The notes below the pieces were generated by a model. That model ran no database searches, was not told where the DNA came from, and saw only the letters and a program-made list of their open reading frames with translations. Shown in pieces: positions 907 through 47,600 of a stretch of 64,000 nt of DNA. Position 1 is the stretch's first letter. Each line of letters opens with the position of its first letter. Origin of the DNA: Asterias rubens (taxonomy: Eukaryota); assembly GCF_902459465.1 (NCBI RefSeq), contig NC_047071.1, positions 4,216,001 through 4,280,000 of the forward strand, in the 5' to 3' direction. The position numbers and the translations under genes were made by a program.

Positions 907-1556
907 CTAAAGATAAATCACTAATTATCATTTTGTAAATGTTAAATGATTCTCTGGAGATATGCGGAGGAAACTTCAGCTGGTGCGGTTATCCCATTCC
1001 ATTGTAAACATGACATGACGTTTGCAAGTCTCTCTAAAACAAAACTTCACTGGAGGGTATTTGTGTGCGATATAAACAATGTCGAAATGAAAACTGTGAA
1101 ACCATGGAGACGGAACCTCTCTAACACGCAAATCAAAAACATTAACAGATAACAAACAATTACAAATTATGTTGTTCCCTTGTTTATACCCTCCATACAT
1201 GTTTTGGTTTCCTCGAAATGTGAAAAAAATGCGATTCCTATATATAAAAAAAAAATGTTTCCTCGAAATAATGCTTTGTTCCCTCGAAATAGTTCGCTGC
1301 AACAATCCAAATGATGATTCGAGACGAATGAAGTGATTTCGAGGGAGCCACAAATTATTGTGAGGAACGAATTGTTGTTAAAAAAAAAATTGAGGGAATG
1401 ATGTAATCATATGCCCTATGTTCTGGGCTTGCGTGTTTTTTTCTTCGCAGCCCTCCCAATTGTCTGTCCCCTTTTCCCAACCCTGTGACTTCTTCAGCTT
1501 TTTTTCTTCTTCATCTTTCTCTTCTTCTTTACATCTCTTCGTCTCGCCAAACCTAC

Positions 1557-2375
1557 CTTTATTATTCTCCTCACACCTATTGATGATAACTTTTTTGCAG
1601 GGGAATACTTCCTCGATCATGCTAAACAGCTTGGGGTCGTATTCAGACAAAGCCTTTCGGTTGGATATACCATTATGTATGCCATCGACGAAATCCCGAT
1701 GGGTCTGACAGTTGTAGTAGGCCTGAACACCCTCCGCAAAATACTCTCGGTATTGCGAGATGGCGTAGGTGTTCTGCCAAAGACCGGCTGCTTTCGCCTC
1801 GGTCCAGACCTCTTGCAGTCTAGCGTCGAATGTCCGATCCACTTTTCTCATGGCAACAATTTGGATTGAATGCGCGAATTCGTGGACTAAAACGTCCTCC
1901 TCACTCCACCGATCCTTCCAGTAGCTCCAACAGAGGATGTTCTCTTCACCATCCGTAGCGATGGGTCTGGACGCGGTACCTCCAAGACCTCTTGCTCGAT
2001 CGTTCCACCAAGACGGCAAGTAGCTATGCTCAGGGATGTCTAAGGTTTTCTCACGGTAGCCGATCACACCGACTCGCCCGTAAGAATCAAACATGGCGTC
2101 TCGGACATCTTTTCGATCGGCCAGCATGAAACGTACCACGTAACAGGCGCGGGTGAGAGCATCATCATTTGGCTGGTTGGACGACACTATAGGAATGCCG
2201 TAGGCATGGGTGTACTTCTGGTAGAAATTGTCGAGTGGTATCTCGGCCCGTAAGTCGTCTGGAATTGGTGAGACGTTCATGCAGTCACTGGTATCCAATG
2301 CCTGGCCCCTTCCAATTTTACGGGTAGATTCATCCCGGAATTCCCCATCACCCGGAACTACGTCATGGTCAAAAT
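1557..2375 (-). CDS. Catalytic exon of a zinc metalloprotease (zincin; HExxH plus downstream E, lethal-factor/PPEP-like arrangement); partial gene
   Basis: 819-nt phase 1-1 exon: acceptor ctttgaag|at at 2375, donor aaag|gtaggt at 1557. Encodes FDHDVVPG...YGIPIVSS...RARGLGG...GEENILC...VLVHEFAHSIQ...LWQNTYA...EYFAEGVQAYYN...CKKVIINRCEENNK. The ORF-track tail 1378-1556 (RFGETKRCKEEE...) is probably intron read-through. Candidate upstream exon 4806-4759; candidate last exons near 1035-945 or 57-13. Confidence 0.85.
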
Positions 2376-17100: not shown

Positions 17101-18159
17101 CTTCAGAGCTCAACAACCTTGGAGGTTAATGATGAGGGAACCAAAGTGAAACGGAAGGCCCCTCTACCAGACTACGATGAGACCACTCCATCAAGAACAG
17201 TCGTGGTGGTTAATCTACCCACAGAAAACCCATCTATTGAAAGCATTGCTGAGCTGTTCAAGCATTGCGGTGACATTTCTTTGGTGAGAATCCTACGCCC
17301 TGGGAAAGCTTTCCCACAGGATGTCCGTAAGCACATAGAGAGGCACAGTGAAGTCCGTAATAAAGTCTGCGCTCTGGTGGAGTTTGAAACTGGACAGGCC
17401 GCCCTGAAGGCTGCCAAGCAAATGAGCGATAAGGACAACTGGCGCACTGGGATGGTCGTGACAGTACTATCAAAGGAGAAGAGAAAAGAGAAAATCAAAG
17501 ATAAAGAGTCTCACCAACAAAGCAATAATCGCAGGAGTACTGAGGGACTCTCTCCGTCACAAGGTGGCGACCTGACAGGCTCTGACGGTGGCGAAGGTGG
17601 AGACTCAGCCAAGAAAAAGAAACGTCAACGGAAAAAGAAGAATGCCAGGATTGATGAACTGGCTGCAGACCGTGTAGAGATCCCAGGTACACCCAGCTCC
17701 TCCGATGTAGAGAATTCCCCTTTACCAAGCCGCAGGCACATCAGCAAGCCCGTCATTGTCCCCCAAGGTAAGAGCCCGGTCCATCTTAGCCCGAGCAACA
17801 CACCAAAAGGAAGTCCCAACCCAAGTCCTCATGGTAGCCCTCGACAACAGAGGAAAGTCGGCCGATCGCCACTCGCTAATTCTCGTAATAGCCCAAGGAA
17901 TAGCCCAAGAGCTAGCCCAGAGTTGGGTCGCAAGATGTATGATAGTTTCTCGGATCACAGTAATACATCGAGTCCTTGGGTGCAGCGTCGTAAACTTCTT
18001 GCGGCATCATCTGAGGCAAGTCCAGTGGGTAGCCCCTTAATGGCTCGAAGGAGCTTAACCCACGCTAATGAGCTAGAGTCGTTAGTGAGATTGCCTGCAG
18101 GTCCAGACGGTACCAAAGGATTCTCTGTAGGTAGAGGGCGTGGTATCCCTAGGAACTGA
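14136..18159 (+). CDS. LARP6: La-related protein 6, 2 coding exons, 530 aa
   Basis: Exon 1 14136-14303 (donor ttg|gtaaat); exon 2 16735-18159 (acceptor ctgtag|gtt), in frame with ORF 16876-18159. La motif (KQVEFYFSDANITKDAFLLKHVRRNKEGYVSLKLITSFKKVK), RRM-like (SRTVVVVNLP...CGDISLVRILRPG...CALVEFE), basic NLS-like KKKKRQRKKK, SPWVQRRK, C-terminal LSA/SUZ-C motif RLPAGPDGTKGF. Confidence 0.93.
15548..16625. mobile_element. Foldback-type element with ~260-bp inverted arms in the LARP6 intron, containing a nested element (~16015-16360)
   Basis: aacggtcgcactaaata... / ...tatttagtgcgacccgtt; arms align over ~260 bp. Nested element taagcttgggcgatatc...gatatctcccaagctta is flanked by tcacc on both sides. 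Confidence 0.8.
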
Positions 18160-25597: not shown

Positions 25598-26915
25598 TTA
25601 AAGCTTGGATGGATGGTTTTGAGCACCCTTCAGCTCCAAACTGTCCATGTATTTAAACAAAGTCTTGGTGTATTCTTCTGGGTATTTCTGAAGCCCTCCA
25701 GCGTGAGGTGCATCATCCCAAGCCTTAAGATGCGCAAGTTGTCCAGTGCGGTCGGCCCAGCACCTGACGAAGTCTTCCATGGTTTTAGTTTTACACATTG
25801 GATCAACAGCCGAGTAGAACACCAAGAGAGGAGTTTGAAATGGATTCTTATACATCGCTGCTTTGGCCTCGTTCATTACTCTCTGAGTATACTTGTACGT
25901 CAGTAGATAGTACACATGAGCTACGGAGAATATTAACTGCTGCATCAACCAACGACTTGAGAGGATGTGTGCCACGCCCTTCACCCTGTCCCATGGTCCC
26001 TCAATGATCATGCTATCGAAGACGTGCCCAACGATGCGGTCTCGAAGCTCGCCGATTTCCTTACTGTTCTCTGCAAGCATCTGAGATAGTAGGATGGAGT
26101 ACACAACTGAACCTATAGAGAAAGCATGCACGATGATGGGTGATGCTGCCACGTCTGTATGAGTCAGGAGAATATGAATGATTTCCCTGGCGATGACTTT
26201 GGCACTGCTCGGCCAGTAGTAGTAGGAGGACTTTGGGAAGAGGGTCAAGACATTGTAGCCTCTTCTGGCATAGAGTTGCCTGTAGCGTTTAATTGCTTTC
26301 TCGGTGCATGTCATCCATGGCATCAGAAGAACCAGTGGTGTTTCAGCATCTTCAAATGAGAATTGGAAACTGTTGAAGAAACTGTACAGACTCAAGAAAG
26401 GCTCGATCGGACTTAGACGGGAGAAGGGCGACAGGGAGCCAGACCACTTCTGAATCTGAATCTGAATTACATGTACATAGTCAGCAAAGTATCCTATGGA
26501 AACATATAACACCAACTTGTTGAAGAAGCCAATTAAGAAATTTAAGTTTAAGACATGGGAGCAGGTAGGGACTGAAAACCCCAATCCATGTAAGGCTCTG
26601 GTCCAGGCAGGGCATCGAACCAGGGTCCATAGAGGTGAAAGGCAGGGACACAAAACCACTGAATTATCCCGACTGGCTGCCCAGAATCGTGTCAAGGGCC
26701 ACAACAAGGACTCAAATACTGACTTTATTCCTGTTCAATCAGTGCAAGGGAAACAGGTCAGAAATTAATGATTGTTTTTAAACAGAGATATTTAATGATG
26801 TTTACCTAGTCAGTTTCCCTGGTGGTTTATTACTTGATATTTATTGATACTTACTTGATTTGTATTTATGTAATCTTAGAGAAGGAGACACATCAATGAC
26901 TTCAGCAGCTTCCAT
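25598..26915 (-). CDS. TMEM53/DUF829-like alpha/beta-hydrolase-fold protein with C-terminal SKL
   Basis: Main exon from ~26455 (or an internal acceptor near 26370) to the stop at 25598: PLVLLMPW...IIVHAFSIG...GHVFDS...PLLVFYSAVDPM...WDDAPHAG...HPSKL*. Candidate ATG exon 26933-26855 (ATG 26915, MEAAEVIDVSPSLRLHKYKS, donor gtaagt). The junction phase is unresolved. The ORF-track N-terminus (26456-26707) runs through a SINE and is probably not coding. Confidence 0.8.
26520..26700 (-). mobile_element. SINE-like repeat in the TMEM53-like intron
   Basis: Contains a B-box-like gggcatcgaaccagggtcc on the + strand reading; a similar segment occurs at ~34130-34185. Confidence 0.5.
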
Positions 26916-33194: not shown

Positions 33195-33580
33195 TTAAAG
33201 GCAGTGGACACTATTGGTAATTACTCAAAATAATTATTAGCATAAAGCCTTTCTTGGTGACGAGTAATGGGTAGAGGTTGATGGTGTAAAACATTGTGAG
33301 AAATGGCTCCCTCTGAAGTGCCATAGTTTTCGAGAAAGAAGTAAATTTCCACGAATTTGATTTCGAGACCTCAGATTTAGAACTTGAGGTCTCGAAATCA
33401 ACCATCTAAATGCACACAACTTCATGTGACAAAGGTGTTTTTTCTTTCATTATTATCTCGCAAGTTCCATGACCGATTGAGCTCAAATTTTCAAAGGTTT
33501 GTTATTTTATGCATATGTTGAGATATACCAACTGTGAAAGCTAGTCTTTGACAATTACCAATAATGTCCACTGCCTTTAA
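33195..33580. mobile_element. Kolobok-like MITE (main family)
   Basis: Same TIRs and TTAA flanks; 3' of the PTP-like stop codon. Confidence 0.85.
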
Positions 33581-33902: not shown

Positions 33903-36900
33903 CTAACACAAGCTGATGTCTGCATCAATGTTAGCAGTCAAACCGCGAGTGAGCATGACGGAATACTCGTACAACACCTGTGAATCAACAGAGAAAGAAA
34001 TCAGCAAATGGAAGGTAGTGTCATAGAATTCCAACTACTCCAAAAATTAATGACCGTAAAAAACTTCCAATTTGTTTTTACCCTTACACCAATGTGTATT
34101 CAGTAATTCAGAAAAAAACACAACTCTACTCACATATGGCCCTAGCAAAGAATCGAACCAGGGCACACTGAGGTCAAAGGTTACGGTAAGGCCATCTCCG
34201 AATTAGCGGCTACAGCTAGGGCTACAGCTATATTACCGCACCATCATGCGTTTGGGTACAGCATGTCCTTAGCAACACCCTTAGCAACAGCCGTAGCCAG
34301 AGCTGTAGACGCCAAATCGGATAAAGCCTAAGTCTTCTTGAAGGCAAGTCCTACCTTATAAATGAAAGCATAATGTTCTCTCAGTAGCACTGCGGCCCCT
34401 CTGTCATGTCGGATGCTACAAACAATAGATGGTACATCCACGGTACACAGGTCCTCTAAGCTACGCATACCACTGTCCATGGCGAGTAGGGTACCAGTCC
34501 TACCACAGCCGTCACTGAAGAAAAAGAAGAAGCAAATAAACTGGGTCAATAGCTGGCTACTTTGCTGAGACAGTTTACTCTGTTATTTATTTCAATTCAA
34601 AGGGAAAAAAATTGGAGGGCCAAAGTTTAACAAAAAAAAACATTAGATCTTAACCATCACCAGGCACTAGGTGAGGTTTTGGGGAGCACCATGTGTAAAT
34701 TCTCTTTTGACTGGTACTTCCAACGTCCATGTGTTGGCAGATTCGCCTTCATTTGCTGCCAGTTTTCCTCAATCTTGTTTGTGTGCGACCCAAACTCATT
34801 TACAAACTCCTTGGAATGGTTGACGGTCTCATGTATCTAGCCGTGTTTGTCCAAGTTAATGTAAGCTTTCCAGCAGTCGGAAATTATAGTTGTGCCGAGA
34901 GCAATCCAGTCCCTTATGATGGGTAGAAGTGAATCCTAAGTACGTGTTTCAACAGTCACAATGAAGCATTTCCTAGATTCCTCTTCGATGCCCCCAAACA
35001 CCTATTGCCCCTCCACATAATGTCCCTGGTAGTATTTCCTCTTGCCGATTTTGCTCTCGTCAATCTGGACGCGCTTTCCTTCTCCGACAATTTGCTCCTT
35101 CCCCAGATTGAACATGACTTCCTCATACGTTTCGCGGCAAAACATGTCCCAACCGACCCCCGTGTGCTCTCCCAGCTGTAATTGTTGCCGTCAATGTGTC
35201 TGACAAAGGTCACAGCACCACCAATAAGTGAACTTTAAAACTTCCTCTATTGAAAGATTACTGTTGGGAAAACCAACTCTTGCTCCTGATGGATTTCTCG
35301 CATCAATATTTCTTGCCAGTCTTCCTTCTCCGGCACTCCCATTTCACTTTGTCCAGTCTATCACTGCACTCGACAAACACCATGTCTTCTCCACCTCTCA
35401 TAACTATTGGACAAGAACAACCAACCTACAGAATCAGATCGTAGAGGCGGCGCATTTATGCGAACATACCAACATCAACTTTCTGAAGTCATGAATTTTT
35501 GTACTGACTTGAATCAGCTCCACCAAGCCTATTAAAATGCCAAACAATGGAAACAAAAACTTGACACAGACGTCACCATGATGATGATGCTTACCTACAA
35601 TGGGCTACGATAGGACCGTAGGATTCTTGTACAGTTTGTCTAACTTGTAGTAAGAATGATATCATAACTGCGCTGCTAGCTGGAACATCAGAAGTCGGCC
35701 ATTGTGTAAACCAAAAGTGGGTGATTGGACGACACAGATTCTTCTGTTGAGGGGGCAAACAAATAAATACAGGCTATGATATGATAATTTCAGAAATATT
35801 GTTTATTACCCTCGTATATTTGGTTTGCAAAACGTATCTGTTAACTTTACTAGCACAGAGTGAATTTCTCTTTGGTCTTAACGTTTTGAATAGCTTGCTC
35901 TAGTCATCGTGAGGAGACTGAAGAGTGTGAGACACATTGATCGATTTATAGGGGTTCAGGGGCTTAACTTGACCTCATCTTCTGCTAAGCATAAAATATT
36001 GATTATAAATTTTCTGCTAAGTAACAAGGAGCTGGATACCAGTCATAAATTGTACATGAGACATGGTACTTTGGCTGGCCATCTTATTCTAGTAAGCATA
36101 ATTAATTTTGGCTTAGCTACTTTTTGTGCTAAAGCAGCTCTTTGAAATCGGGGCCAGATTGGTTCGCTGATTTTTAACTTCATCTTCGTATCTTACCTGG
36201 ATATTCTTAACAAGGAGTGTTGACATACAGTAGTTCTCAGTCAAGATACATCCTTGTCTCATCACCAAGATGTCACCGTAGAGCTGAGCTGCTTGGATGC
36301 CTTCCTCCCTCGGCCAGTACCACGGACACACCTGATGATAATCAATTAAGTACTTTAAAATACAGGTGCTTCAAAGCACTGACCAATAACCCTCTAATAT
36401 ACTGGTACCAGAGACTGCCAGAGGAAAGGCCCAGGCACGGCAAAACTATCAACAACAAAAAAACTGAATCTGAATCAACTTTGAGTTAAGCCATATCCGA
36501 ATTAGCAGCGGCTACAGTTTCAACTGTTACGAGGGGGTTGCTATAAGGACATGCTAAACTTCAACACGAGCTGAAGCAGAAATCCACCCAGACACATAGC
36601 TGTAGTCACTGATTTGGACACAGCCTTAGGACGTGTCCGAAACGGTGACTTTTGCTACAGCTACGGCTAGATCGTGCACGTCCCTGCCTATCTTTTAAAA
36701 CTGAAAGACCCGCTGATCTAGCAGTAGCTGTAGCAAAAGTCGCCAAAAAGGCCCCACATTGTGCTCGTCGTTTGACTTACCACTCCCATCTCCTCAGGTG
36801 AACAGAGACAGATCAGGGTTCTAGACTGCTGCTCCCATACCATCTCCCAGAAATCAGCTAGACTGGTACCCCATGGAGCTGCAGTGGCAATGTAACGATA

Positions 36901-39900
36901 GCCACCTTTACCATACCCCTGGCAATACCAAACACGCAAACAAAAGATTGGTATGATGGAAAACTGATGTTATTTGTCTTTGTTCAAACCCAAATAGTTT
37001 AAACTAACTTACAAGAACTTAACAATAGTGGGTTGTAGGGTTCATCAACATTCAGGGCTAGAGCTTCTCCTTTCTCCTAGAGCGAATCCCTTCTCTTTTG
37101 GATAATTGCACAGGGTTCTTTTATTCGAATAACACAACACACAAGACCAATGGCTTAATGTCCCATCCGAAGGATGCAGCAAATGGTTAAAATAGTGGTA
37201 ACTTAAATAGTGGTTCAAGTATCTTGCCTAAAGTGTCCGGTGTTCTCATCCGCTCAGCCACGACATGCCAACTTCAATGACCAAGTACACTTTTGTTTTA
37301 CCTTGACTAAGTTTGCATTAAGGAATCCATTCTGGTTGCTAGGGGAGACTTTCTCCAGAGTGATTCTCGTCTTGGGTGGAGGGTGAAACAGACTGCCTGA
37401 GTTGCCGCCATGACCATGGGCCTGGCTGTGTCCATGACCAGGAAGGCTCAAGAAATGCTTGGGAGAACTTTGAGATTTGTTCAAGGCACTGTTCTGAAAG
37501 TCGACTAGTGTCTGATGGAAAAATAGAAAGATAAGAGGTATAAATCAAAACAGATTTGAGAATATATCTATATACCGGTATACATCATAGGCCTGTTACC
37601 CAAGGAGCTGCAGAGGTTATATTGTTACAGCCGCCTTTACCGATTCCCGGAGAGAAATCGTCATAATATCAACATTAACAAAACAATTTGTGAATACAAC
37701 ATTATATATAAAAGGCCTTTTCACTGTACACATATACACAGTTAGTTCTGTACACAGTTGTGTTGCCATACACAACTCATGCTGTAGGTCAACTGGCTGA
37801 AAAATAGCACCAAGAGTAAGAGGGTTAATTAATTAAAATAGTTTATTTAGTAAGGTTTGCAGTAACACCATGTAATGATTAAACCTACATGTAGGTTGGA
37901 CAATGAGCGTACCGATCAAAACGTCAAATTGAAACCTCTGGTTCTTTTCAAAACCACTCATTTAGAGGTAACATTACATAGTGTTACCACAAACCTTACT
38001 ATATCGTATTTCCTGCATGTAAAGTTTCTAATCCTAACATAGTTAAGTCTAGTTCCTTACCTCGTATTCCTCTACAATAGCCTCAACGTAGCTATAGAAC
38101 TGAGACAAGGCGTGCATACTCAACACATGGGATGGATACATCTGAAATTTAACAAGTCAAAACATTCAGTTCAATGTTGCAAATGATGGAGCTTGTATTT
38201 TATTTGCGTTCAAAATAAATCGTAAGCAATGAATGTCTTACAATTACTCAAAATCGGGAACAGGTGGGGTCAAAATGGGTGCAACTTAAGTTAAGAGGTG
38301 ACATGTGGTGACATGGAGCGCTGAGGAGGGGAAACGGTACTGGTTGGAGTAAAGTATGAACCTGTAAGACTAAAGGGGACATATATATGGGGTAGCTAGT
38401 ATCCTAGACACATGGATGAAGGTGGGGGAACAGGAACAAGCTTAAGTTACAGCTGCAAGTGGGATACAGATGGCACAAAGGTGGCACCCAGAAGAGAACC
38501 CAGTTGGGATAACAAGCCGAGGTGCCCAGTATGTAAAGGTAAGTGGGCGTAAGAGACGAGGACAGACCCTCAAGAAGTGAGGAAACAGGGACAAGCTTAA
38601 CAGCTGCAAGTGTGATAAAGATGGCACAAAGGCGGCACCCAGAAGAGAACCCAGTTGGGATAACAAGCCGAGGTGCCCAGTATGTAAAGGTAAGTGGGCG
38701 TAAGAGACGAGGACAGACCCTCAAGAAGTGAGGAAACAGGGACAAGCTTAACAGCTGCAAGTGGGATACAGATGGTACAAAGGCGGCACCCAGAAGAGAA
38801 CCCAGTTAGGATAACAAGCCGAGGTGCCCAGTATGTAAAGGTAAGTGGGCGTAAGAGACGAGGACAGACCCTCAAGAAGTGAGGAAACAGGGACAAGCTT
38901 AGCAGCTGCAAGTGTGATAAAGATGGCACAAAGGCGGCACCCAGAAGAGAACCCAGTTGGGATAACAAGCCGAGGTGCCCAGTATGTAAAGGTAAGAGGG
39001 CGTAAGAGAAGGGGACAGACCCTTCAATCTTCAATGGTGGAATCCTTATTCAGCTATCTATAGCTAAACTAGGATGGTGCAGAAGTGACGTCACAGGCAA
39101 AGTGCATAAGAAATAAGGTGAGGTTAAGGTCTCAACAAGAAATAAAGACTGATAACAAAAGACGACAACTTAGGGTGCGTTAAAACTGACGGATGATTTA
39201 GAGGAGATGTGAGCCAAGGCTGCTATTGCAGGAGACATTACAGTGGCTGCTGGGAGCTGGTTCCATAGTCGGATAGATCGAGGGTAGAAGGAGTATTCGT
39301 ACGGATCTATGGATGTGACTGGTATGGTGAACTTTAACTGATGGAAGTGAGGAAACAGGGACAAGCTTAACAGCTGCAAGTGGGATAAATATGGCATAAA
39401 GGTAGCACCTAGAAGGAGAACCCAGTGGGTATATCCAGCTAAGGTACCATGTATGTAGAGGCAAGTGGGCGTAACAGAAAGGGAAAGGCCCTTCAGTAGT
39501 GTGGGATCAGGTACATACATGTATGCCACTCACAGAGAGAGCGCATGGGAAAAGTCAAGGTGCAAATAATCTGAAAAAGAATTGAAACGCAACTTCTTAA
39601 AATAAAAAGTATGATTCTAGACACATATAGGGCTAGATAGCTCAGTTGCTACAGCGCTGGGGTCATTGGTTCGAGTCCTACTCTGGTCAGTTTTCTTTGT
39701 TCAACCCCAAAAAATATAAAAGCCCTCACCTCAGAAGCTCCTATCTCCTCATCATCCATGACCAGGCCTTCATTAACGGCGGGCATGAGCTGATGGATAG
39801 TGGCAGGCATAATAGAGATGGTATGAAGAGGACTCAACTGATGAGACTCATTCAACGTGTCATGTAGTACTTTGCCGTCAAAGTAGTACCGGTTATGAAT

Positions 39901-42900
39901 GGCGCGTCGCTTGGCCAGACGAGATCTATAGATCTAAAACAATGAGAAATCTGGATTATAATTAGTGGAACTGTCTGACCATTCATTATCATTCACTAAC
40001 AGATAAACTATGCCAAATCATGTAGTGATATCACAACAACAGTAACCCTCCTACTGTCTGACCATTCGATATCATCCACTTTAGTTTTATGATGCAATAT
40101 GATGCAATATGATATGTGGTGAATGCATTTACTCAGAACACAGTCAACCCTCCTACTGTCTGACTGTTAAATATCATCATCCACTGTGGTCTTGAATGAT
40201 AGATAAACTATACCAGCCGGCAGTACATGTACGTTTTCATGTGGTGAATGAATCTACTCTGTGCACAGTAAGTTAGTGCACAGTCAACCCTCTTACTATC
40301 TGACCATTCAATATCATCCACCTTGGTTTTGAATGACAGAACTATAAACTATACCATTATGCGATACGATATCATGTGGTCAATTAATCTTCACAGTACA
40401 CAGTCAACTTTCTTACCGTTCGACCATTAAGTACCATCCACTGTGGGTTTTAAACAAAGAGTGAATGATTTTTCACGGTACATACACAGTCAACCCTCCT
40501 ACCTATCTTGCCATTATCATCCACTCTGGTTTTGAATGATAGATAAACTATAGCTTCACAGTACACTGACCGTCAGCCCTCCTACTGTCCGACCAATCAG
40601 CATCATCCACATTGGTTTTGATCACATTCTTATTGAATTACTATATAATTAAGATCATGACAATATGTACTTACCCTGTAAGCAAGAACTGTACCAATCA
40701 CGACAGCAAGTAGTGTTGTTATACTCAAACCTGTTGCTACGCCAACTTGTGGTTTGTCGTTTTTATTGGGGTGGGCAGTTGTTTGGGTCGATTTGTAAAC
40801 ATGTACTGATAACACCTAGAGGAAACATTATACACTCAATTTGAATTCTAAAAAAACGGACAGCCGACATTAGGGCTTGATGGCTCAGTGGGTAGAGCGC
40901 CATCATGTTAAAGGGAAGGTACACGATTGGTAATTGTCACAGACCAGTCTTCTCACTTGGTGTATCCCATCATATGCATAAAATAATAAGCCTGTGAAAA
41001 TTTGGGCTCAATCGGTCATCAAAGTTGCGAGAAAATTATGAAAGAAAAAACACCCTTGTGGGACGAATGTGTGTGCTTTCAGATAGGAATAAAAGACTTT
41101 TATAATTTTAGTGAGAAATTACCTCTTTCTCAAAAACTACATTACTTCAGAGGCAGTCGTTTCCCACAATGTTTTATACTATCAACAGCTCTCCAATGCT
41201 CGTTACCAAGTCAGTTTTTAAGTCATTGCCAAACATGTACCTTCCCTTTAAATTAGAGGGCATTGGTTCAAATATTGCTCTAGTCACTTTTCGTTGTTCA
41301 ACCACAAAACATAATAATATAATAATAATTGGGAAGGCTAACCAATCTTAACCTGAATTGCAAAGGACGGGGCTACGTGTTTGAGCTGCAAGGATGCAAA
41401 GCCATTTTAGGCAGCCAGCCACCTCAACTCATAAACACAAAGCACAGACAAAGATTGAAAGAGTTTGGTTTTCAGGAAAAACTTGAGGGCTCAGACGAAA
41501 ATACACCTGTGGAATTCAAGAGAGCCAGTGCACAACTCTACTCAAACATGCCCTTAGCAAGCAATGGAACCAGGGTCACATTGGTGAGAGAGGAGCGCTT
41601 TGCACACTAAGCCACCCATGCCAGCAGAATAATGATCAAACAAGTGATTTTCTAAGAGAGGTTTGCAGCACCCTATGTAGATCTCTTTTGAGTATTGCCT
41701 CCTGAAAACGATCATGGGCATACTGGTCGAAACCTCGAGTCTTTAACCAACAGTTCTTTTCTGAAACAACACTACACAAAAGAGATGTTCACATGGTGTT
41801 ACCAAAAACCTCTCTTAGTTATTTCAAATCCGACTTGTGTCTACGTGACTTTCTATATTGTGTGATATTGATGAAACAACATACCTTTGGTTCTAGATAG
41901 GTCTGTAGTTGAGTAATGTCTCCCTGCATGCTAAGACCCACACTCTCAGTAAGTGGAGAATCACATCTTCCTTTAGACACGATACAAAAATCCACCTGTA
42001 CCACTGTCAAAGGGTTTCCTTTAATTTTAAGACGTTTCTTTAACGGACAATGAAGAGTGTCATTCAGGAGCTCCACATCGGGCGGGCTGGAACGATTTAA
42101 AACCACACCGGCAAACTTTGAGATGGAGGAGCGAAGCTTGGCCACGTCGGGACAAAGTTCAGTCCAGGATATTTGAAGAATTAGTTGAACAGCTGTGTCC
42201 TGTTGAGGACTATGGGTGTTGGGTACCTGTGTGGCTGGAACTGCTGTCAATCTTGGAGTCTTTGGATTTTCAGACGGTACAGGAATTAATTTGGTTGCTG
42301 GATGAGATGACGCTGGGGGGTTTCCAGTTGTGATGGGCTTAGCTTGGGTTGTGATGGGTTGGGATTGGGTTGTGACGGGTTGGGATTGGGTTGTGATGGC
42401 TTGGGATTGGGTTGTAATGGGTTGGGATTGGGTTGTGATGGGTTGGGATTGGGTTGCGATGGGTTGGGATTGGGTTGGGATGGGTTGGGATTGGGTTGTG
42501 ATGGGTTGGGATTGGGTTGTGATGGGTTGGGATTGGGTTGTGATGGGTTGGGATTGGGTTGCGATGGGTTGGGATTGGGTTGTCATGGGTTGGGATTGGG
42601 TTGTCATGGGTTGGGATTGGGTTGTTATGGGTAGGGCTTGGGTTATGGTGGGTTGGGATTGGGTTGTGGTGGGAGGGTGTGGTGTTGGTTTTTGCGATTT
42701 TACTGGTTCTTCAGTGGGAGAGGGTTTCCCAGTGTGATGAGGGTGCTCATCAGTGGGTCTAACCTCAGTAGGGTTAGGGCGAATGTGTCGGGTAGTAGGG
42801 TGACGAATGTGTCGGGTAGTAGGGTGATGCTCCTCTGTAAAATGAGGCAGGGTATCTGATTGGGCAGTCTGTGCCCTGGTCGATCGTCTTTGAGTTTGAG

Positions 42901-43281
42901 GAGCTGGTGTCGACTGCTCTGGGTGAGGAGAGGTAGTGGTTAACTGAGGTAGGCTGCTGGTGGCGTGGACTACTGGTGGTATCGCAGTTACCAGACTAGG
43001 TGTGGTTGGATGGATAGGTTCAGCGGTTAACGAAGACCCAGTGTGTAAATGACTCGTGGTGTGTCGCAGCAGTGTGGTGGTGTCGCCAGTTGTGATATCT
43101 ATTGAGGATGTGGTCTCCGGATAGAAAGGCTTCAAGGTGGATCTTCCTCCCATAACTGGGGTTGTTTGCTTGGGTAAATACCCATGAGGTCGGGTCATAT
43201 GTCGTATCCATGGTGTTGTGAGCCGATATTTGATGGGAGTTGTCGAATAATCATCGTCCATATCTTTACTGGCAGCTAATC
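33903..43281 (-). CDS. Single-pass receptor with mucin stalk and degenerate tyrosine-phosphatase domain (probable pseudophosphatase); 5' end not resolved
   Basis: Exons 43281-41885 (T/S/P-rich mucin plus Cys-containing globular region), 40815-40675 (TM: VGVATGLSITTLLAVVIGTVLAY), 39933-39730, 37511-37302 (..KTRITLE...GFLNANLVK), 36918-36781 (YIATAAP...DFWEMVWEQ), 36331-36197 (CPWYWP), 35743-35595 (ITHFWFTQWPT...GPIVAHC), 34514-34355 (SDGCGRTG...HDRGAAVLLREHYAFIYK), 33977-33903 (VLYEY...*). All GT-AG with matching phases; ~869 aa from the mucin exon on. Confidence 0.9.
34188..34330. mobile_element. Short hairpin MITE (GCTACAGCTA/TAGCTGTAGC family, TAA/TTA flanks); relatives 36488-36630, 36625-36752, 56985-57123, 60025-60152, 62170-62283
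   Basis: Imperfect palindromes with ggcc(g/a)tntccgaa termini; probably Harbinger-like. Confidence 0.7.
34695..35470 (-). pseudogene. Decayed Merlin/ISXO2 (IS1595-like DDE) transposase in an intron of the PTP-like gene
   Basis: Manual translation: ...KWECRR...SNLSIEEVLKFTYWW...GEGKRVQIDESKIGKRKYYQGHYVEGQ*VFGGIEEESRKCFIVTVETRT*DSLLPIIRDWIALGTTIISDCWKAY...HETVNHSKEFV...HTNKIEENWQQMK. Several in-frame stops and at least one frameshift; DDE residues recognisable. Confidence 0.85.
38405..39030. repeat. 151-bp tandem repeat (~4 copies) with a diverged copy at ~39345-39500
   Basis: Matching positions at 38543, 38694 and 38845 (period 151). Confidence 0.95.
39170..39345 (-). mobile_element. LINE ORF2 3' fragment
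   Basis: Translates HQLKFTIPVTSIDPYEYSFYPRSIRLWNQLP, resembling the YxxSFFPRxIRxWNxLP motif. Confidence 0.65.
40020..40625. repeat. Diverged tandem array of ~90-110-bp units
   Basis: Recurrent cagtcaaccctcctactgtctgaccatt...atatcatccac...tgaatgatagataaacta, about 6 times. Confidence 0.85.
40908..41251. mobile_element. Kolobok-like MITE (subfamily with AGGGAAGGTAC termini) splitting a tRNA-like module at a TTAA
   Basis: ttaaAGGGAAGGTAC...GTACCTTCCCTttaa; flanks rejoin to ggctcagtgggtagagcgccatcatgTTAAattagagggcattggttcaaat. Confidence 0.85.
42330..42670 (-). repeat. Coding 21-bp minisatellite, ~17 x (T/A/P)TQSQP(I/M/V), in the mucin exon
   Basis: + strand unit gggttgggattgggttgtgat; open in the frame of the PTP-like gene. 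Confidence 0.95.
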
Positions 43282-43342
43282 CTATAAAGAAAGTTAAAAT
43301 AGTTAGATAGTCATTTGGAAAACAACTACACATGTAGATAGC

Positions 43343-44071
43343 TTAAGATGAAAGTCACACTGTCAGCAAAACAAATGTACTCGATAACGATCAATGGAGA
43401 GCTGTTGATAGTATTAAACATTGTGAGGAACAACTGCCTCTGAAGTATCGTTGTTTTGAAAAAGAGGTAATTTTACACCCAAATTTTAAAAGACTTCAGA
43501 CCTAAAGCCTTTTAATACGATCTGAAAGCACACAAATTTGTGCAAAAAGGGTGGGGTTTTTCTTCATTATTCTCTTGTTACTTCAATAGATCCCATTGAA
43601 CTCAAAATTTTGAGGATTTGTTATTTTAAAACACAAAGTGAGAATACTGGTCTCTTTCACAGTTACAAAAGGTGTCCAGTGCCTTTAAAGCCAGTGGACA
43701 CTATTGGTAATTGTCAAAGACTAGCCTTCACAGTTGGTTTATCTCAACATATGCATAAAATAACAAACCTTTGAAAATTTGAGCTCAATCGGTCATCAAA
43801 CTTGCGAGATAATAATGAAAGAAAGAAACACCCTTGTCACACAAAGTTCTGTGCGTTTAAATGGTTGATTTTGAGACCTCAAGTTCTAAACTTGAGGTCT
43901 CGAAATCAAATTCGTGGAAAATTACTTCTTTCTCGAAAACTATGGCACTTCAGAGGGAGCCGTTTCTCACAATGTTTTGTACCATCAATCTCTCCCCATT
44001 ACTCGTCACCAAGAAAGGTTTTATGCTAATAATTATTTTGAGTAATTACCAATAGTGTCCACTGCCTTTAA
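43343..44071. mobile_element. Two adjacent Kolobok-like MITEs (~43343-43688 degraded; 43685-44071 well preserved) sharing TTAA
   Basis: Junction ggtgtccagtgcctTTAAagccagtggacac. Confidence 0.8.
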
Positions 44072-44630: not shown

Positions 44631-47600
44631 TATTATTATTATTATTATTATTCCTTGTCTTTCCTCAAAAGACCCCACAGCACCCACAACGATTGCCGTG
44701 GTGCCCTGTGCTTTTGCTGTGTTGCCCTTTGCAAAGTTGCACTACACAAATTAACATTTTCCCCATTAGCCTATAGGAGTGCCTCTTACACCATAGAGGA
44801 AAATTCAGGACGGTATAAATGTATGAAGCTCATGTCATTTGTGCATTGTGTGGTATGTCAATGTACCCATGTGCAACTCAGCAGGGTCTTATCAAATTAG
44901 CATCGGCCAATGACCCCAAAATGAAACAAGTCTGAACCCCTAGCATTTTCCCCAACCATTCCTTTTTATTACTCTTAACTTAAACTTTAAAAAACCAAAC
45001 CTCCCCCAAAAACATTCTGCAAATATAATAAATATTTAATTGCAGGTCATCGTGCGTGTTACAGGTGTGCGTATCTGATGCATTTCCCAAAGTTGTCGCT
45101 ACCTTGTTCCCAGTGTAAAAAAACTGGAATTAGTTTGTGTGTGTACTTTGTACCACCATTCATTATGAAATTGACACGGTGTTACTGCAAACTGAAATAA
45201 ACCTTTCTCGCAAAAAAAACATGGAAGAAATAAAGTACAATTGGTAACAAACAAATACATTATTGTATTATCCTTTTCACTTCAGATTCTAGATTGAACA
45301 TTAAGAGAACCCCAAGTTGATAAACCTGGGTTTAGTGAAAGTTTAATTTTAGTGTGTGTGTGTGTGTGTGTGTTTTTTATTGTCCTCCAGAATGACTGAA
45401 TGTCGCTGTGCAAATTTCAAACATTTACAATTGTACAATTTGAGTTTTCATAAGCCTATTTGGGGACTTTGGATGGACCACAGCCGAGGCCATTCAATCA
45501 ACAAGAACAATTAGTTTGTGAATCTCTATCTTTGTACAAATGTTTTAAAATAAATGTTTTAAAATAAATTATTTCAAAATAAATGTTTTAAAATAATAAA
45601 GTAAAGGGAGGAGAAACACAGCTGTTGCACAATTTGTCATCTCATTTGTGATCTGACATGTGGAAGCAATAATAACAAGATAATATCATTCTCCGGGAAG
45701 TGGATGAACAGTTATATTGTTTTGGGTACAGGAACAAAGCAAATTGTGGGGTGGGGGAAACTTCACGAAGATAATAATTCACTTCCAGGATACACTGCAG
45801 GATTTCTAGACCCAAACACCCAAGTTTGGAGGTTTGAATTGAAATAGAGTCATCGGAATGTTTTTTACTAAAAAAAACATCTTTGCAATCTGGAGTTTCC
45901 TTTCCATTTCTAAAAGGTTAAATTATCTTTATTGATTTTTGTAAACTTAATCTGAAGAGTGAAAATTTAACCATTTGAGCCGGACAACTAATGCATGGTC
46001 TTCTTAAAGTTGTATTTCACTTTGTAGTAAAACAAAAATAGCAGAGTCTTTCTACTTTAGCCGCTATTCGAGCACACATATGTCTGAAAAGCTAGCTAAT
46101 AGTATACTATAGTATTATTAGCACTAGTACATAGTGCATGTTAAGAACCGTTTCTGTTATATGTAAGTTAAAAGACAAGTTCATTAAGTATATTATATTA
46201 TATTTATTGACCAAACCAACAGCGGACGAGCCGCCAATTACAGGAAAGGATACAAAAAAAACAATAAGAAATATTCATATAGCCTATATAAAAACAATCT
46301 GATATGTACAAAGTTAACAATTAAAATAGAATCATCTTAGGAAAGAAAATTAAAGCATACATTGAAGATCAAGTAAAACAAAATAGGGAACAGAAACAGA
46401 CCACCATGAACGACTGTGAAAATATATTTAAAATAAATTTTAAAAGCAAAAGCCTACATTAAATTATAAACAGAATAAACGATAAAAAGACAAGGGAAAA
46501 AAAAAACAAAAAAACAAGTACATTCCTCTTGTAGTAGAGTATAGTCGTACCGTGAAAGGTGCAAAATGCGCGACCAGGAACACGGCATCCTCTACTTACA
46601 AGTGGGAAAAAGTGCAACTCGAGATAAAAACGCCACCCATCTGTGGCGTATCTTTTTTTTTTTAAGTAGACTGGCCCTACTAGTACTATTAAATAGGGCT
46701 ACCTGTCAGATCACAAACACAGCATGTTTCCTTTTAAATGTTTTCTCAGTCAAACTCTTTGGTCTACTCAACCTCAATGACACAACTTACCTTACTCACC
46801 TTACTCATGGTGGAAATGAAGATGTACAGTAGATTGTGTAGAGTACTCGACTCCCACTACCACTACTCACTTGACTAATTATTTATGTTAAAAAGTTTGC
46901 TTTTTTATCACATTCACAACAAAACAAATTCATTGAAATTAAACCAACAAGAGTTTCAATAAATGTTTTAATAATAGAGGCTAAGAAACTTACCAATCAA
47001 GTGGCAAACCGATAAGCTCATCAGAAGGAGTTGAACTGCAGCTTTCGATGACACTGATGGCAGCCTACTGTTGGACCACATCACAGCCACCATTATTGGC
47101 GGTTTAAAGCACAATGCAGACCCCACCAAGCACAACGACCGAACACCTCTTTTTACACAACACACTGAACCCCCAAAAAACTTCAGCAGACAACTGTTTA
47201 CCAAATACACATCTTCCTGTCAGACATTGTTAGTGAGCATGCATGTTCATGTTCCACTAGTAGCTCAAGATGAAGTTCACATTCTCACTGTTTCGTAGAG
47301 GACTTAAATTTGTAGTTCAGTGACGATCTAATAGAAATCGAGGCCAAATGGGTCGTGACCAAGTTTTTATTTACTTTAGAGTGTAGTCTGGTAACATTAT
47401 TCTCCGTATGTAAATGGTGTTCACTTAACAAGGTACCAGACACCAAACTTTGCTTCAATTACACAAGTTGGTGCCGTGTGCATTTTTCGGGGTTAAAATA
47501 ATGAGTTTGGGTTTTGTATTGGGCCATACATGTATTTCAATATGAAACCAAAACAAATGCGTTCAAGTGGAAGTGGAAATAAATACGTAGTCTGACAAAA

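What the first reader, a model, noticed from the sequence alone, without database searches (positions are those of the whole stretch)
33903..43281. Mucin-stalked receptor pseudophosphatase with four degenerate catalytic motifs
Seen: (a) the KNRY pTyr-recognition loop is absent, replaced by a His/Gly-rich segment (PGHGHSQAHGHGGNSGSLFHPPPKTR); (b) WPD is WPT, losing the general acid; (c) the P-loop is HCSDGCGRTG, with Cys and Arg kept but Ala changed to Asp; (d) the Q-loop has no Gln (HDRGAAVLLREHY); ATQGP is ATAAP. Known: Ala-to-Asp in the P-loop plus loss of the WPD Asp marks inactive IA-2/PTPRN, but the rest is not recognisably IA-2 and there is only one PTP domain. The ectodomain is ~350 aa of T/S/P-rich mucin then a ~115-aa Cys-containing globular domain, a CD34/podocalyxin- or SEA-like layout (inference). 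Inference: a lineage-specific adhesion or signalling receptor using a dead PTP fold as scaffold, redox sensor or non-pTyr phosphatase. Strongest candidate for undescribed biology in the window.
Basis: partly seen in the sequence, partly recalled or inferred. Interest (0 to 1): 0.72.

Follow-up and report, generated by a model that had tools for sequence, protein, structure and literature searches.

The report
Starfish mucin-stalked receptor pseudophosphatase gene
This is a real, expressed and strongly conserved starfish gene for a cell-surface receptor whose tyrosine-phosphatase domain has lost nearly all its catalytic residues. It is the echinoderm branch of an old, unnamed invertebrate receptor-phosphatase family, not a one-off oddity and not a copy of the known dead phosphatase IA-2.

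Summary
The window is Asterias rubens. The gene is LOC117295556 (XP_033634143.1, "uncharacterized protein", 929 aa), on the minus strand, with 11 coding exons at 47093-33903.

- **Expression:** spliced RNA contigs from 4 runs confirm every junction from the juxtamembrane exon to the last exon.
- **Architecture:** signal peptide, T/S/P/Q mucin stalk (16.5 copies of a 7-aa repeat), a SEA-like βαββαβ domain with two invariant Cys, a TM helix, and one classical PTP domain.
- **Catalytic motifs:** GNSG replaces KNRY, ATAAP replaces ATQGP, WPTSDVP replaces WPD, the P-loop is HCSDGCGRTG, and the Q-loop has no Gln.
- **Not IA-2 or R7:** A. rubens has a separate true IA-2 gene (C16) and a separate PTPRR-like gene (C23).
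- **Family:** it forms a well-supported clade (100/99) spanning echinoderms, hemichordates, amphioxus, arthropods, molluscs, annelids and a nemertean. Every member examined lacks the canonical WPD Asp.
- **Echinoderm changes:** all echinoderms have the P-loop Asp and have lost the Q-loop Gln. Starfish and urchins have also lost KNRY.
- **Selection:** dN/dS is 0.06-0.10 in the PTP core, 0.08-0.23 in the SEA-like domain and about 1 in the mucin stalk.

The most likely function is non-catalytic. The scan's earlier notes hold only this same stretch.

The parts
46994..47093 (-). Coding exon 1: Met plus signal peptide (MVAVMWSNSRLPSVSSKAAVQLLLMSLSVCHLI, then 1 nt), GT donor.
   Evidence: Exact match to the N-terminus of XP_033634143.1 (P0255). 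The exon is 96% identical in A. amurensis, and Patiria and Acanthaster also have a separate short first exon. Not checked with reads here.
41885..43281 (-). Coding exon 2: N-terminal region, mucin stalk and most of the SEA-like domain.
   Evidence: Open frame, AG acceptor and GT donor. Identical to P0255.
42327..42673 (-). Tandem repeat of 21 nt x 16.5 copies, encoding TTQSQPI heptads in the core of the mucin stalk.
   Evidence: Tandem Repeats Finder. Copy number differs in A. amurensis, and dN/dS there is about 1.3.
41885..42199 (-). SEA-like membrane-adjacent domain, first part (P0255 residues 395-499). Includes the two family-invariant Cys and a KKR basic site in the beta2-beta3 loop.
   Evidence: Alignment A1. 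AF2 pLDDT 82.6, topology βαββαβ. Structural matches to PCDH15 MAD12, Nup54, CDH23 MAD28, the IA-2 ectodomain, dystroglycan, MUC16 SEA and Notch HD.
40675..40815 (-). Coding exon 3: last strand of the SEA-like domain (40815-40783) and the transmembrane helix (40740-40678).
39730..39933 (-). Coding exon 4: juxtamembrane region with the conserved RLAKRRxxxNRYYFDG and acidic MDDEE motifs.
   Evidence: Junction 39730 to 38141 seen in RNA contigs. Conserved across asteroids. Disordered in the AF2 model.
38061..38141 (-). Coding exon 5: N-terminal helices of the PTP domain (PSHVLS...EAIVEEYE).
   Evidence: Junctions seen in RNA contigs. 100% identical in A. amurensis.
37302..37511 (-). Coding exon 6: the loop that replaces the pTyr-recognition (KNRY) motif. 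GNSG sits at 37406-37395 inside a His/Gly-rich insert.
   Evidence: No PDB match for this exon on its own. pLDDT below 50. Junctions in RNA contigs.
36781..36918 (-). Coding exon 7: YIATAAP (36888-36874) and DFWEMVWEQQ.
   Evidence: Pfam PF00102, 42 bits. PDB matches. Junctions.
36197..36331 (-). Coding exon 8: central beta-sheet of the PTP domain.
   Evidence: Junctions. Too divergent for a PDB hit on its own.
35595..35743 (-). Coding exon 9: WPTSDVP loop (35701-35681) and the His-Cys of the P-loop (35602-35597). Ends in phase 2.
   Evidence: Pfam PF00102. PDB alignment places WPT over WPD. Junctions.
34355..34514 (-). Coding exon 10: SDGCGRTG of the P-loop (34514-34493) and the Gln-less Q-loop IRHDRGAAVLLREHY (34411-34370).
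   Evidence: Pfam PF00102. PDB alignment. Junctions.
33903..33977 (-). Coding exon 11: C-terminal 24 codons and the TAG stop. The 3' UTR continues for at least about 350 nt below 33903.
   Evidence: Junction 34355 to 33977, and record 2 of run X1 runs past the left end of the stretch laid.

Best explanation
The region holds exons 2-11 of Asterias rubens LOC117295556. This is an expressed, selectively maintained type-I membrane glycoprotein.

Its parts, from the N-terminus, are a signal peptide, a fast-evolving O-glycosylation-type mucin stalk, a disulfide-stabilised SEA-like membrane-adjacent domain, one TM helix, a conserved juxtamembrane segment, and a single classical PTP-fold domain.

The gene is the echinoderm ortholog of an old bilaterian receptor-PTP family that is unnamed in the literature searched here. 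That family is absent from the vertebrate R1-R8 scheme. No member examined has the canonical general-acid Asp of the WPD loop.

On the echinoderm stem the P-loop gained an Asp (HCSDG), the same substitution that helps silence IA-2, and the Q-loop glutamine was lost. In starfish and urchins the KNRY pTyr-recognition loop was lost as well.

Cys-X5-Arg survives, but the domain lacks the general acid, the water-activating glutamines and the pTyr-recognition loop that turnover needs. It most likely does not dephosphorylate pTyr.

- **Shown:** gene structure, expression, orthology, motif states, fold and purifying selection.
- **Inferred:** catalytic inactivity, a non-catalytic role in which the conserved PTP surface and juxtamembrane motif bind partners, and possible proteolytic processing in the SEA-like loop.
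For: **Gene model and expression**
- 11 GT-AG exons translate exactly to XP_033634143.1.
- One 2185-nt RNA contig spans the 3' UTR to exon 2. All 7 junctions in the laid stretch appear in one to four runs from 4 studies.

**Fold**
- PF00102 scores 181 bits. The AF2 core has pLDDT 85-95.

**Orthologs**
- Found in A. amurensis, Patiria, Acanthaster, two named sea urchins (Strongylocentrotus purpuratus, Lytechinus pictus), the crinoid Antedon, two hemichordates, amphioxus, crustaceans, insects, molluscs, an annelid and a nemertean.
- The family clade has 100/99 support and its internal topology follows the species tree.
- The SEA-like domain, TM and juxtamembrane motifs are shared by the members examined except amphioxus and Diptera.

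**Motifs**
- No member examined has a canonical WPD. Urchins read WLD. Protostome, amphioxus and one hemichordate member examined have HCSPGTGRTG; Saccoglossus has HCSAGTGRTG. Most keep KNRY (a few representatives vary its last residue), and most keep the Q-loop Gln. All echinoderms have HCSDG and have lost the Q-loop Gln. Starfish and urchins have also lost KNRY.

**Not IA-2 or R7**
- A true IA-2 exon lies on C16 (73 bits to 2i1y, next non-IA-2 hit 40) and a PTPRR-like gene lies on C23.
- The gene is single-copy in this genome.

**Selection (dN/dS)**
- A. rubens vs A. amurensis: PTP core 0.10, SEA-like 0.08, mucin about 1.3.
- Patiria vs Acanthaster: PTP core 0.058 over 236 codons, with dS 0.78.

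**Inactivity by analogy**
- PTPRN and PTPRN2 lack PTP activity because of two residue changes in the catalytic domain (PMC11802530).
Against: - No enzymatic, binding or localisation data exist.
- Cys and Arg of the P-loop are invariant across the family. That fits a retained phosphate-binding or residual catalytic role, for example towards phosphoinositides, as reported for IA-2beta (reference).
- Asterias has an Asp two residues after the WPD position (WPTSD), but Patiria and Acanthaster do not.
- The tree has no vertebrate R7 or R8 sequences, so a deep sister relationship to either is unresolved.
- The family may already carry a fly gene name that I could not identify.
Confidence: 0.8

Rival explanations
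1. It is the starfish ortholog, or a recent paralog, of IA-2/PTPRN (R8), the known dense-core-vesicle receptor pseudophosphatase.
For: - It shares the P-loop Asp (HCSDG) and the loss of the WPD Asp.
- It has a single PTP domain.
- The membrane-adjacent ectodomain has the same fold class as the IA-2 mature ectodomain (2qt7: Z 7.1, rmsd 3.4, 85 residues aligned).
- NCBI auto-named one bee member PTPRN2.
Against: - A. rubens has a separate gene on C16 whose P-loop exon matches human IA-2 and IA-2beta at 73 and 70 bits, with the next non-IA-2 hit at 40.
- The equivalent exon of this gene does not list IA-2 among its 60 best PDB hits.
- The whole domain scores 112 bits to IA-2 against 143 to PTPRR.
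- There is no PF11548 or RESP18 match.
- The P-loop Asp is absent from every non-echinoderm family member examined, so it is convergent.
Confidence: 0.03
2. It is a divergent member or sister of the R7 group (PTPRR/STEP/HePTP), and its juxtamembrane RLAKRRxxxNRYYFDG works like a kinase-interaction motif that docks MAP kinases. The dead domain would then act as a MAPK anchor.
For: - R7 proteins are the best-scoring single-domain human PTPs for both the starfish domain (143, 134, 128 bits) and the annelid domain (194 bits).
- The Q-loop 'DRG/DRAG' resembles PTPRR 'DRGG'.
- NCBI auto-names fly and lobster members 'PTPN7-like'.
- The juxtamembrane motif fits the basic-x-hydrophobic-x-hydrophobic pattern and is conserved in asteroids.
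Against: - A separate PTPRR-like gene with canonical KNRY, ATQGP and SAGLGRTG exists on C23.
- The margin over other subfamilies is small for the annelid member (194 against 188).
- The one R7-like sequence in the tree does not group with the family.
- The motif sits directly after the TM helix, where a basic cluster is expected anyway. No binding test was done.
Confidence: 0.12
3. It retains catalysis of a non-canonical kind, for example towards phosphoinositides or another phospho-substrate, using the intact Cys-X5-Arg.
For: - Cys, Arg and the P-loop glycines are invariant in all 19 aligned family members.
- The core is under very strong constraint.
- There is a precedent: weak phosphoinositide activity is reported for IA-2beta.
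Against: - An Asp in the P-loop, no conserved general acid and no Q-loop Gln each impair the canonical two-step mechanism (established PTP enzymology; PTPRN precedent).
- Constraint on a pseudoenzyme surface would explain the conservation equally well.
Confidence: 0.12
4. It is a decaying pseudogene or an annotation artefact.
For: Four catalytic motifs are degenerate, and two PTP exons are too divergent to hit PDB on their own.
Against: - The 929-codon frame is intact over 11 exons, and correctly spliced RNA appears in 4 runs.
- The same 11-exon structure holds in three other asteroid genomes.
- dN/dS is 0.06-0.10 in the PTP core.
Confidence: 0.01

Closest known systems
IA-2 / PTPRN and IA-2beta / PTPRN2 (R8 receptor pseudophosphatases)
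   Same: - Type-I receptor with a SEA-like membrane-adjacent ectodomain and a single PTP domain.
- Asp in the P-loop (HCSDG) and no WPD Asp.
- Cys and Arg are retained.
   Different: - Not orthologous, because a true IA-2 gene lies elsewhere in the genome.
- No RESP18 or PF11548 sequence match.
- Has a mucin stalk.
- KNRY and the Q-loop Gln are also lost.
- The P-loop Asp arose independently within echinoderms.
PTPRR / PTPN5 / PTPN7 (R7, KIM-containing PTPs)
   Same: - Best HMMER scores among human single-domain PTPs.
- Asp in place of the first Q-loop Gln (DRG).
- Single PTP domain after a TM helix, as in PTPRR.
   Different: - R7 enzymes are active, with canonical KNRY, WPD, HCSAG and QTxxQY motifs.
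- A separate R7-like gene exists in A. rubens.
- A KIM has not been demonstrated here.
Orphan invertebrate mucin/SEA-like single-domain receptor PTPs (e.g. Patiria LOC119741166, S. purpuratus LOC100893225, Saccoglossus LOC100369011, Tribolium 'mucin-3A', Homarus 'mucin-17-like')
   Same: - A true ortholog group: monophyletic, with topology following the species tree.
- Shared juxtamembrane motifs and shared lack of a canonical WPD Asp. The SEA-like domain with two invariant Cys is shared by the members examined except amphioxus and Diptera.
   Different: Most non-echinoderm members keep KNRY (a few representatives vary its last residue) and have A(T/C)QAP. Most have HCSPGTGRTG (HCSAGTGRTG in Saccoglossus) and most keep the Q-loop glutamines. 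The echinoderm branch is the fully degenerate one.
SEA / SEA-like membrane-adjacent domains (PCDH15 MAD12, CDH23 MAD28, Notch HD, dystroglycan, MUC16 SEA, Nup54)
   Same: - The same βαββαβ fold, placed directly before the TM helix and after an extended stalk.
- This domain class is often cleaved (PMC11527881).
   Different: - No GSVVV autoproteolysis motif.
- Sequence identity is only 6-15%.
- Carries its own pair of invariant Cys.
PTPRU D1 and the D2 domains of tandem receptor PTPs (pseudophosphatase domains)
   Same: PTP folds that keep the Cys but lack other catalytic residues and act by binding rather than by catalysis (titles and abstracts). HCSDG also occurs in some D2 domains.
   Different: Those are D1/D2 domains of tandem receptors with Ig/FN3/MAM ectodomains. 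Here the pseudophosphatase is the only domain.

Membership tests
Classical (Cys-based, class I) PTP domain, Pfam PF00102 | Sequence and fold match to the PTP domain | tested here: met
   PF00102 E=2.8e-53, 181 bits. AF2 core pLDDT 85-95. Aligns to PTPsigma and PTPRR over about 230 residues.
Classical (Cys-based, class I) PTP domain, Pfam PF00102 | HC(X5)R(S/T)G signature with nucleophilic Cys and Arg | tested here: met
   HCSDGCGRTG. H, C, S, G, G, R, T and G are invariant in 19 family members.
Catalytically competent classical PTP | KNRY pTyr-recognition loop | tested here: not met
   GNSG aligns with KNRY. The loop is disordered in the model.
Catalytically competent classical PTP | WPD loop general-acid Asp | tested here: not met
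   WPTSDVP. HMMER aligns the T with the D of WPD. The downstream Asp is not conserved in other asteroids.
Catalytically competent classical PTP | Q-loop glutamines (QTxxQY) and Ala in the P-loop | tested here: not met
   HDRGAAVLLREHY has no Gln. The P-loop has Asp.
IA-2 / PTPRN (R8) | Orthology: it is the genome's best match to IA-2 | tested here: not met
   A different locus (G000:C16, about 1.30 Mb, L013) matches 2i1y and 2qep at 73 and 70 bits. This gene's own exon does not list IA-2 among its top 60 hits.
IA-2 / PTPRN (R8) | RESP18-homology domain and IA-2 ectodomain (PF11548) by sequence | tested here: not met
   No Pfam hit at E<=1 outside the phosphatase domain apart from one chance-level hit (E 0.19). 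No PF11548 hit genome-wide, though that search is exon-wise and weak.
IA-2 / PTPRN (R8) | P-loop Asp plus loss of the WPD Asp | tested here: met
   Shown to be convergent, because non-echinoderm relatives have Pro or Ala.
R7 (PTPRR/PTPN5/PTPN7) | Kinase-interaction motif N-terminal to the PTP domain | tested here: inconclusive
   RLAKRRAIHNRYYFDG fits a loose docking pattern, but it abuts the TM helix. No binding test was done.
R7 (PTPRR/PTPN5/PTPN7) | Orthology and phylogenetic placement | tested here: not met
   A separate PTPRR-like gene lies on C23. The R7-like sequence falls outside the family clade. No vertebrate R7 sequences were in the tree.
SEA-like (divergent SEA / MAD) domain | βαββαβ ferredoxin-like fold next to the membrane | tested here: met
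   AF2 pLDDT 82.6. VIA Z scores: PCDH15 MAD12 9.9, CDH23 MAD28 7.8, IA-2 ectodomain 7.1, dystroglycan 6.7, MUC16 SEA 6.0, Notch2 HD 5.9. Foldseek E-values are only about 1e-2.
SEA-like (divergent SEA / MAD) domain | G/SVVV autoproteolysis motif | tested here: not met
   The beta2-beta3 loop reads ...KKRLKIKGNPLTVVQV, with no GSVVV.
Orphan bilaterian mucin/SEA-like single-domain receptor PTP family (unnamed) | Monophyly of PTP domains, shared architecture and juxtamembrane motifs | tested here: met
   Clade support 100/99, present in 100% of bootstrap trees. Shared SEA-like domain with two invariant Cys. Shared PSHxL...EAIxEEF and NxxL/F-acidic motifs.
Processed or decaying pseudogene | Broken frame, no expression, dN/dS near 1 | tested here: not met

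The most novel reading that the evidence does not exclude
The gene represents a ninth, so far unclassified receptor-PTP subtype. It dates to the bilaterian ancestor, survives in amphioxus and most invertebrate phyla, and is lost in vertebrates.

The subtype has never had a canonical WPD general acid, which would make it an ancient non-canonical or pseudo-phosphatase lineage. In echinoderms it became completely dead, acquiring IA-2's P-loop Asp by convergence.

It may signal through cleavage or force-sensing at its SEA-like domain, combined with phospho-independent docking on the fossil active site.
Probability: 0.4. Interest if true: 0.62.

Novelty: new variant of a known kind. Interest (0 to 1): 0.5.

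Why it matters
Receptor pseudophosphatases such as IA-2 and PTPRU are few, and each has taught something about non-catalytic signalling. This gene adds three things:

- **A natural series.** The family runs from members that lack only the general acid (insects, molluscs, annelids, hemichordates, amphioxus), through the crinoid (plus P-loop Asp, minus Q-loop Gln), to starfish and urchins (also without KNRY). Purifying selection remains intense throughout the asteroids examined. This could show which PTP surfaces matter once catalysis is gone.
- **A family outside the vertebrate scheme.** The R1-R8 receptor-PTP classification misses a widespread invertebrate family that databases currently label "mucin-x", "uncharacterized" or, inconsistently, PTPRZ/PTPRC/PTPN7/PTPRN2-like.
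- **A convergence case.** The HCSDG substitution arose independently here and in IA-2.

It is a solid lead rather than a surprise that overturns anything.

Tried and rejected
- **Homolog search with the exon-2 open frame:** no hit. The length filter excludes the 929-aa protein, and the orthologs of allowed length did not score. Solved by searching all representatives with the P-loop exon.
- **PF11548 (IA-2 ectodomain) in the own genome and a DNA pattern for DGAGR(S/T)GT:** both blank. The true IA-2 gene has DGVGRTG and was found by reading all P-loop exons.
- **PDB search with exons 6 and 8 alone:** no PTP hits, because these exons are too divergent on their own.
- **Foldseek of the ectodomain model against PDB:** nothing at E<=1e-3. 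VIA-align gave clearer Z-scores.
- **Literature:** no paper on this family, on HCSPGTGRTG, or linking it to Drosophila Ptp36E or CG7180. Pei and Grishin 2017 on divergent SEA domains is not held.
- **Earlier scan findings:** only this same stretch.
- **Steps not done:**
  - The spliced protein was never typed in. The database copy P0255 was used instead.
  - No complex-prediction job was sent, because no specific binding claim is made.
  - The PTP model was not fold-searched, because sequence evidence already fixes the fold.

Full report
**What is there.** Reading the sequence and translating a model gave ten GT-AG exons in frame from 43333 to 33903.

A search of all protein representatives with the P-loop exon, followed by cluster look-ups, identified the database protein. 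It is Asterias rubens LOC117295556, XP_033634143.1, 'uncharacterized protein', 929 aa (P0255). It is identical to my model from GLAASKD onward.

The true first coding exon is 33 codons plus 1 nt and encodes the signal peptide. It lies at 47093-46994 and splices to the acceptor at 43282/43281. The genome is 417.6 Mb and the window is C11:4216001-4280000.

**Expression and gene model.** I laid Logan contigs of four runs, from four studies and two species labels, on 33903-39902. All seven predicted junctions were recovered: 39730/38141, 38061/37511, 37302/36918, 36781/36331, 36197/35743, 35595/34514 and 34355/33977. Each has CT..AC ends on the plus strand. One 2185-nt contig in run X1 joins all of them and extends into the 3' UTR and into exon 2.

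Contigs cannot give expression level or strand. They do show that the spliced form exists. The same 11-exon structure maps exactly in the A. amurensis, Patiria miniata and Acanthaster planci genomes.

- GNSG aligns with KNRY inside a His/Gly-rich loop.
- YIATAAP replaces the ATQGP motif.
- WPTSDVP replaces the WPD loop. HMMER aligns the T with the general-acid D.
- The P-loop is HCSDGCGRTG.
- The Q-loop IRHDRGAAVLLREHY has no Gln.

Pfam finds one PTP domain at 181 bits and no ectodomain family. The mucin stalk contains 16.5 copies of a 21-nt unit that encodes TTQSQPI.

**Ectodomain.** The roughly 115 residues before the TM helix align across the family, with two invariant Cys and one invariant Thr. 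AlphaFold2 on that alignment gives pLDDT 82.6 and pTM 0.77, with a βαββαβ topology.

Foldseek against PDB gives only weak E-values of about 1e-2, but the hit list is coherent. An exhaustive VIA-align search gives these Z-scores:

| Structure | Z |
|---|---|
| PCDH15 MAD12 | 9.9 (other PCDH15 entries 9.4, 9.1) |
| Nup54 ferredoxin-like domain | 9.5 |
| CDH23 MAD28 | 7.8 |
| CELSR1 | 7.2 |
| IA-2 mature ectodomain | 7.1 |
| Dystroglycan | 6.7 |
| MUC16 SEA | 6.0 |
| Notch2 HD | 5.9 |

These structures are the set usually grouped as divergent SEA or membrane-adjacent domains. PMC11527881 describes that class as often cleaved. There is no GSVVV autoproteolysis motif.

The disordered beta2-beta3 loop carries basic sites in several lineages: KKR in Asterias, RLKR, RMRR and RFKK in three urchins, and RPKR in a nemertean. 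Patiria and Acanthaster have none. Convertase cleavage there is an untested idea.

**Which PTP is it?** The gene is single-copy. Against all solved human PTP domains, the best single-domain scores for the starfish domain are as follows:

| Human PTP | Bits |
|---|---|
| PTPRR | 143 |
| PTPN5 | 134 |
| PTPN7 | 128 |
| VE-PTP | 127 |
| PTPRJ | 124 |
| IA-2 | 112 |

The less derived annelid member gives the same order with a small margin: PTPRR 194, PTPRT 188.

I then read 40 P-loop exons, covering most of the P-loop exon hits of the A. rubens PTPome search. One exon on C16 reads [44 protein letters not shown]. It hits human IA-2 and IA-2beta at 73 and 70 bits, with the next non-IA-2 hit at 40. 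That is the real IA-2 ortholog.

A gene on C23 has canonical KNRY, ATQGP, SAGLGRTG and MRQDR, and matches PTPRR best. The window gene is therefore the ortholog of neither.

**The family.** Homolog searches returned proteins with the same layout from many phyla:

- Asterias amurensis, Patiria and Acanthaster.
- Strongylocentrotus, Lytechinus and a third sequence that groups with the urchins.
- The crinoid Antedon.
- The hemichordates Saccoglossus and Glandiceps.
- Branchiostoma.
- Decapod crustaceans.
- Many insects (Hymenoptera, Coleoptera, Diptera, a mayfly, a cockroach and stick insects).
- The limpet Patella, the annelid Owenia and the nemertean Tubulanus.

No vertebrate member appeared, but this absence was not tested exhaustively. 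Source names are inconsistent: mucin-2/3A/5AC/17, 'serine-rich adhesin', PTPRZ-, PTPRC-, PTPRG-, PTPN7- or PTPRN2-like, and 'uncharacterized'.

An IQ-TREE analysis used 40 PTP domains: 20 family members plus PTPRA, PTPRC, PTPRZ, PTPRJ, PTP69D, PTPN9-like and R7-like outgroups. It recovers the family as one clade with 100/99 support, present in 100% of bootstrap trees. The internal topology follows the species tree: Ambulacraria (hemichordate, then crinoid, then urchins plus asteroids) against protostomes. The tree contains no vertebrate R7 or R8 sequence, because I could not obtain them as references. The family's sister group is therefore unresolved.

**Order of motif loss.**

- No member examined has a canonical WPD. 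The Asp position holds A, V, T, S, I, H, Y, N, P or E, and urchins read WLD.
- Most protostomes and both hemichordates keep KNRY, though a few representatives vary its last residue (KNRD/T/L/S/F) and amphioxus has RNRY. These members have A(T/C)QAP. The P-loop is HCSPGTGRTG (with small variants) or, in Saccoglossus, HCSAGTGRTG. Most keep the Q-loop Gln (DRAGAVQTKEQY).
- All echinoderms have HCSDG and have lost the VQT Gln. The crinoid still has KNRI and ATQAP.
- Starfish and urchins have lost KNRY altogether.

The P-loop Asp is thus an echinoderm innovation and is convergent with IA-2. Branch lengths are long on the echinoderm stem and short within asteroids.

**Selection.** Codon comparisons used exactly mapped CDS.

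| Comparison | Region | dN/dS |
|---|---|---|
| A. rubens vs A. amurensis (dS about 0.06) | PTP core | 0.10 |
| | N-terminal PTP helices plus loop | 0.06 |
| | SEA-like domain | 0.08 |
| | Juxtamembrane | 0.47 |
| | N-terminal region | 0.76 |
| | Mucin repeat | 1.27 |
| Patiria vs Acanthaster | PTP core (236 codons, 91.5% aa identity, dS 0.78) | 0.058 |
| | SEA-like domain | 0.23 |
| | Mucin and N-terminus | 0.38 |

Counts in the close pair are small: 8 synonymous against 3 non-synonymous changes in the core. A first rough count from the RNA-contig differences gave a ratio of about 0.11. Patiria vs Asterias shows 82% identity in the PTP core with saturated dS. The dead domain is one of the most constrained parts of the protein. 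The stalk is constrained only in composition.

**How it most likely works.** Shown: a secreted-pathway type-I receptor with a mucin stalk, a SEA-like domain, a TM helix and a structurally intact PTP fold. In the AF2 model the core has pLDDT 85-95, while the KNRY-replacement loop and the juxtamembrane region are disordered.

Inferred from established PTP enzymology and the PTPRN precedent (PMC11802530): the domain has no general acid, no water-activating Gln and no pTyr-recognition loop, and it has an acidic residue in the phosphate-binding loop. It should therefore not turn over pTyr and probably binds it poorly.

The strong constraint then points to a binding or scaffolding role for the PTP surface and the conserved juxtamembrane motifs. 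The ectodomain would act as a glycocalyx, adhesion or cleavage module. Residual non-pTyr activity through the invariant Cys-X5-Arg cannot be excluded.

**Novelty.** The gene is annotated but uncharacterised. I found no paper on it or on the family. Diptera have members, so a named Drosophila gene may belong here. I could not check that.

I rate the finding as a new variant of a known kind, the receptor pseudophosphatase. I put the chance at about 40% that the family is a previously unclassified receptor-PTP subtype.

Noticed in passing
G000 contig C13 (e.g. 1.05-1.58 Mb, 3.24 Mb, 4.46 Mb, 12.27-12.76 Mb, 13.62-13.71 Mb, 15.67-15.68 Mb): Well over half of the 150 scored PTP-domain exon hits in the A. 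rubens genome sit in clusters on one contig. Many have canonical SAGVGRTG P-loops and some have degenerate ones (RNGVGRSG, RDGLGRSG, SDGVTRSG, SDGLGRTG). This looks like a large tandem expansion of receptor PTP genes in starfish.
   Followed up: partly
G000:C16:1301430-1301800 (L013) and C16:1316251-1316454: The true IA-2/PTPRN ortholog of A. rubens. Its P-loop exon is [44 protein letters not shown], scoring 73 bits to human IA-2.
   Followed up: partly
G000:C23:7786500-7793500 (L001): A PTPRR/R7-like gene with canonical KNRY, ATQGP and SAGLGRTG motifs. It is the closest paralog of the window gene's P-loop exon in the genome (50% identity over 40 aa).
   Followed up: partly
window 41885-42199 (beta2-beta3 loop of the SEA-like domain, around KKRLKIK): Basic or dibasic sites recur in this disordered loop in several lineages: KKR in Asterias, RLKR, RMRR and RFKK in urchins, RPKR in a nemertean and MKRK in Saccoglossus. 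Patiria and Acanthaster have none. This may be a proprotein-convertase site, like Notch S1.
   Followed up: partly
window 38449-39023: A 151-bp tandem repeat of 3.8 copies at 96% identity lies inside intron 4. It creates long spurious ORFs on both strands.
   Followed up: no
window 33211-33405 (-) and 43861-44055 (+); also 34211-34310, 35700-36300, 36500-36700, 37700-38100, 39500-39700: Interspersed repeat copies flank the gene and sit in its introns. The two flanking copies give near-identical 64-aa ORF translations in opposite orientation. The intronic stretches have very high summed depth in RNA contigs from many divergent copies, and some look tRNA-derived and SINE-like (around 39630-39700).
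   Followed up: no
window 1378-2298 (-): A 306-aa open frame has a marginal Pfam hit to PF07737 (anthrax lethal factor N/C-terminal domain family): 28.4 bits against a cut-off of 27.4.
   Followed up: no
window 16876-18159 (+) and 25598-26707 (-): Two long single-exon open frames. One has a La domain plus a SUZ-C motif (LARP-like, 427 aa). The other is DUF829 (369 aa, 96.6 bits).
   Followed up: no
P0269, P0061 (Diptera), P0107 (Branchiostoma): Some family members have lost the SEA-like domain, or nearly the whole ectodomain. Drosophila tropicalis has about 30 extracellular residues. Amphioxus has only a P/T/E-rich stalk. Diptera also carry a long insert before the P-loop.
   Followed up: no
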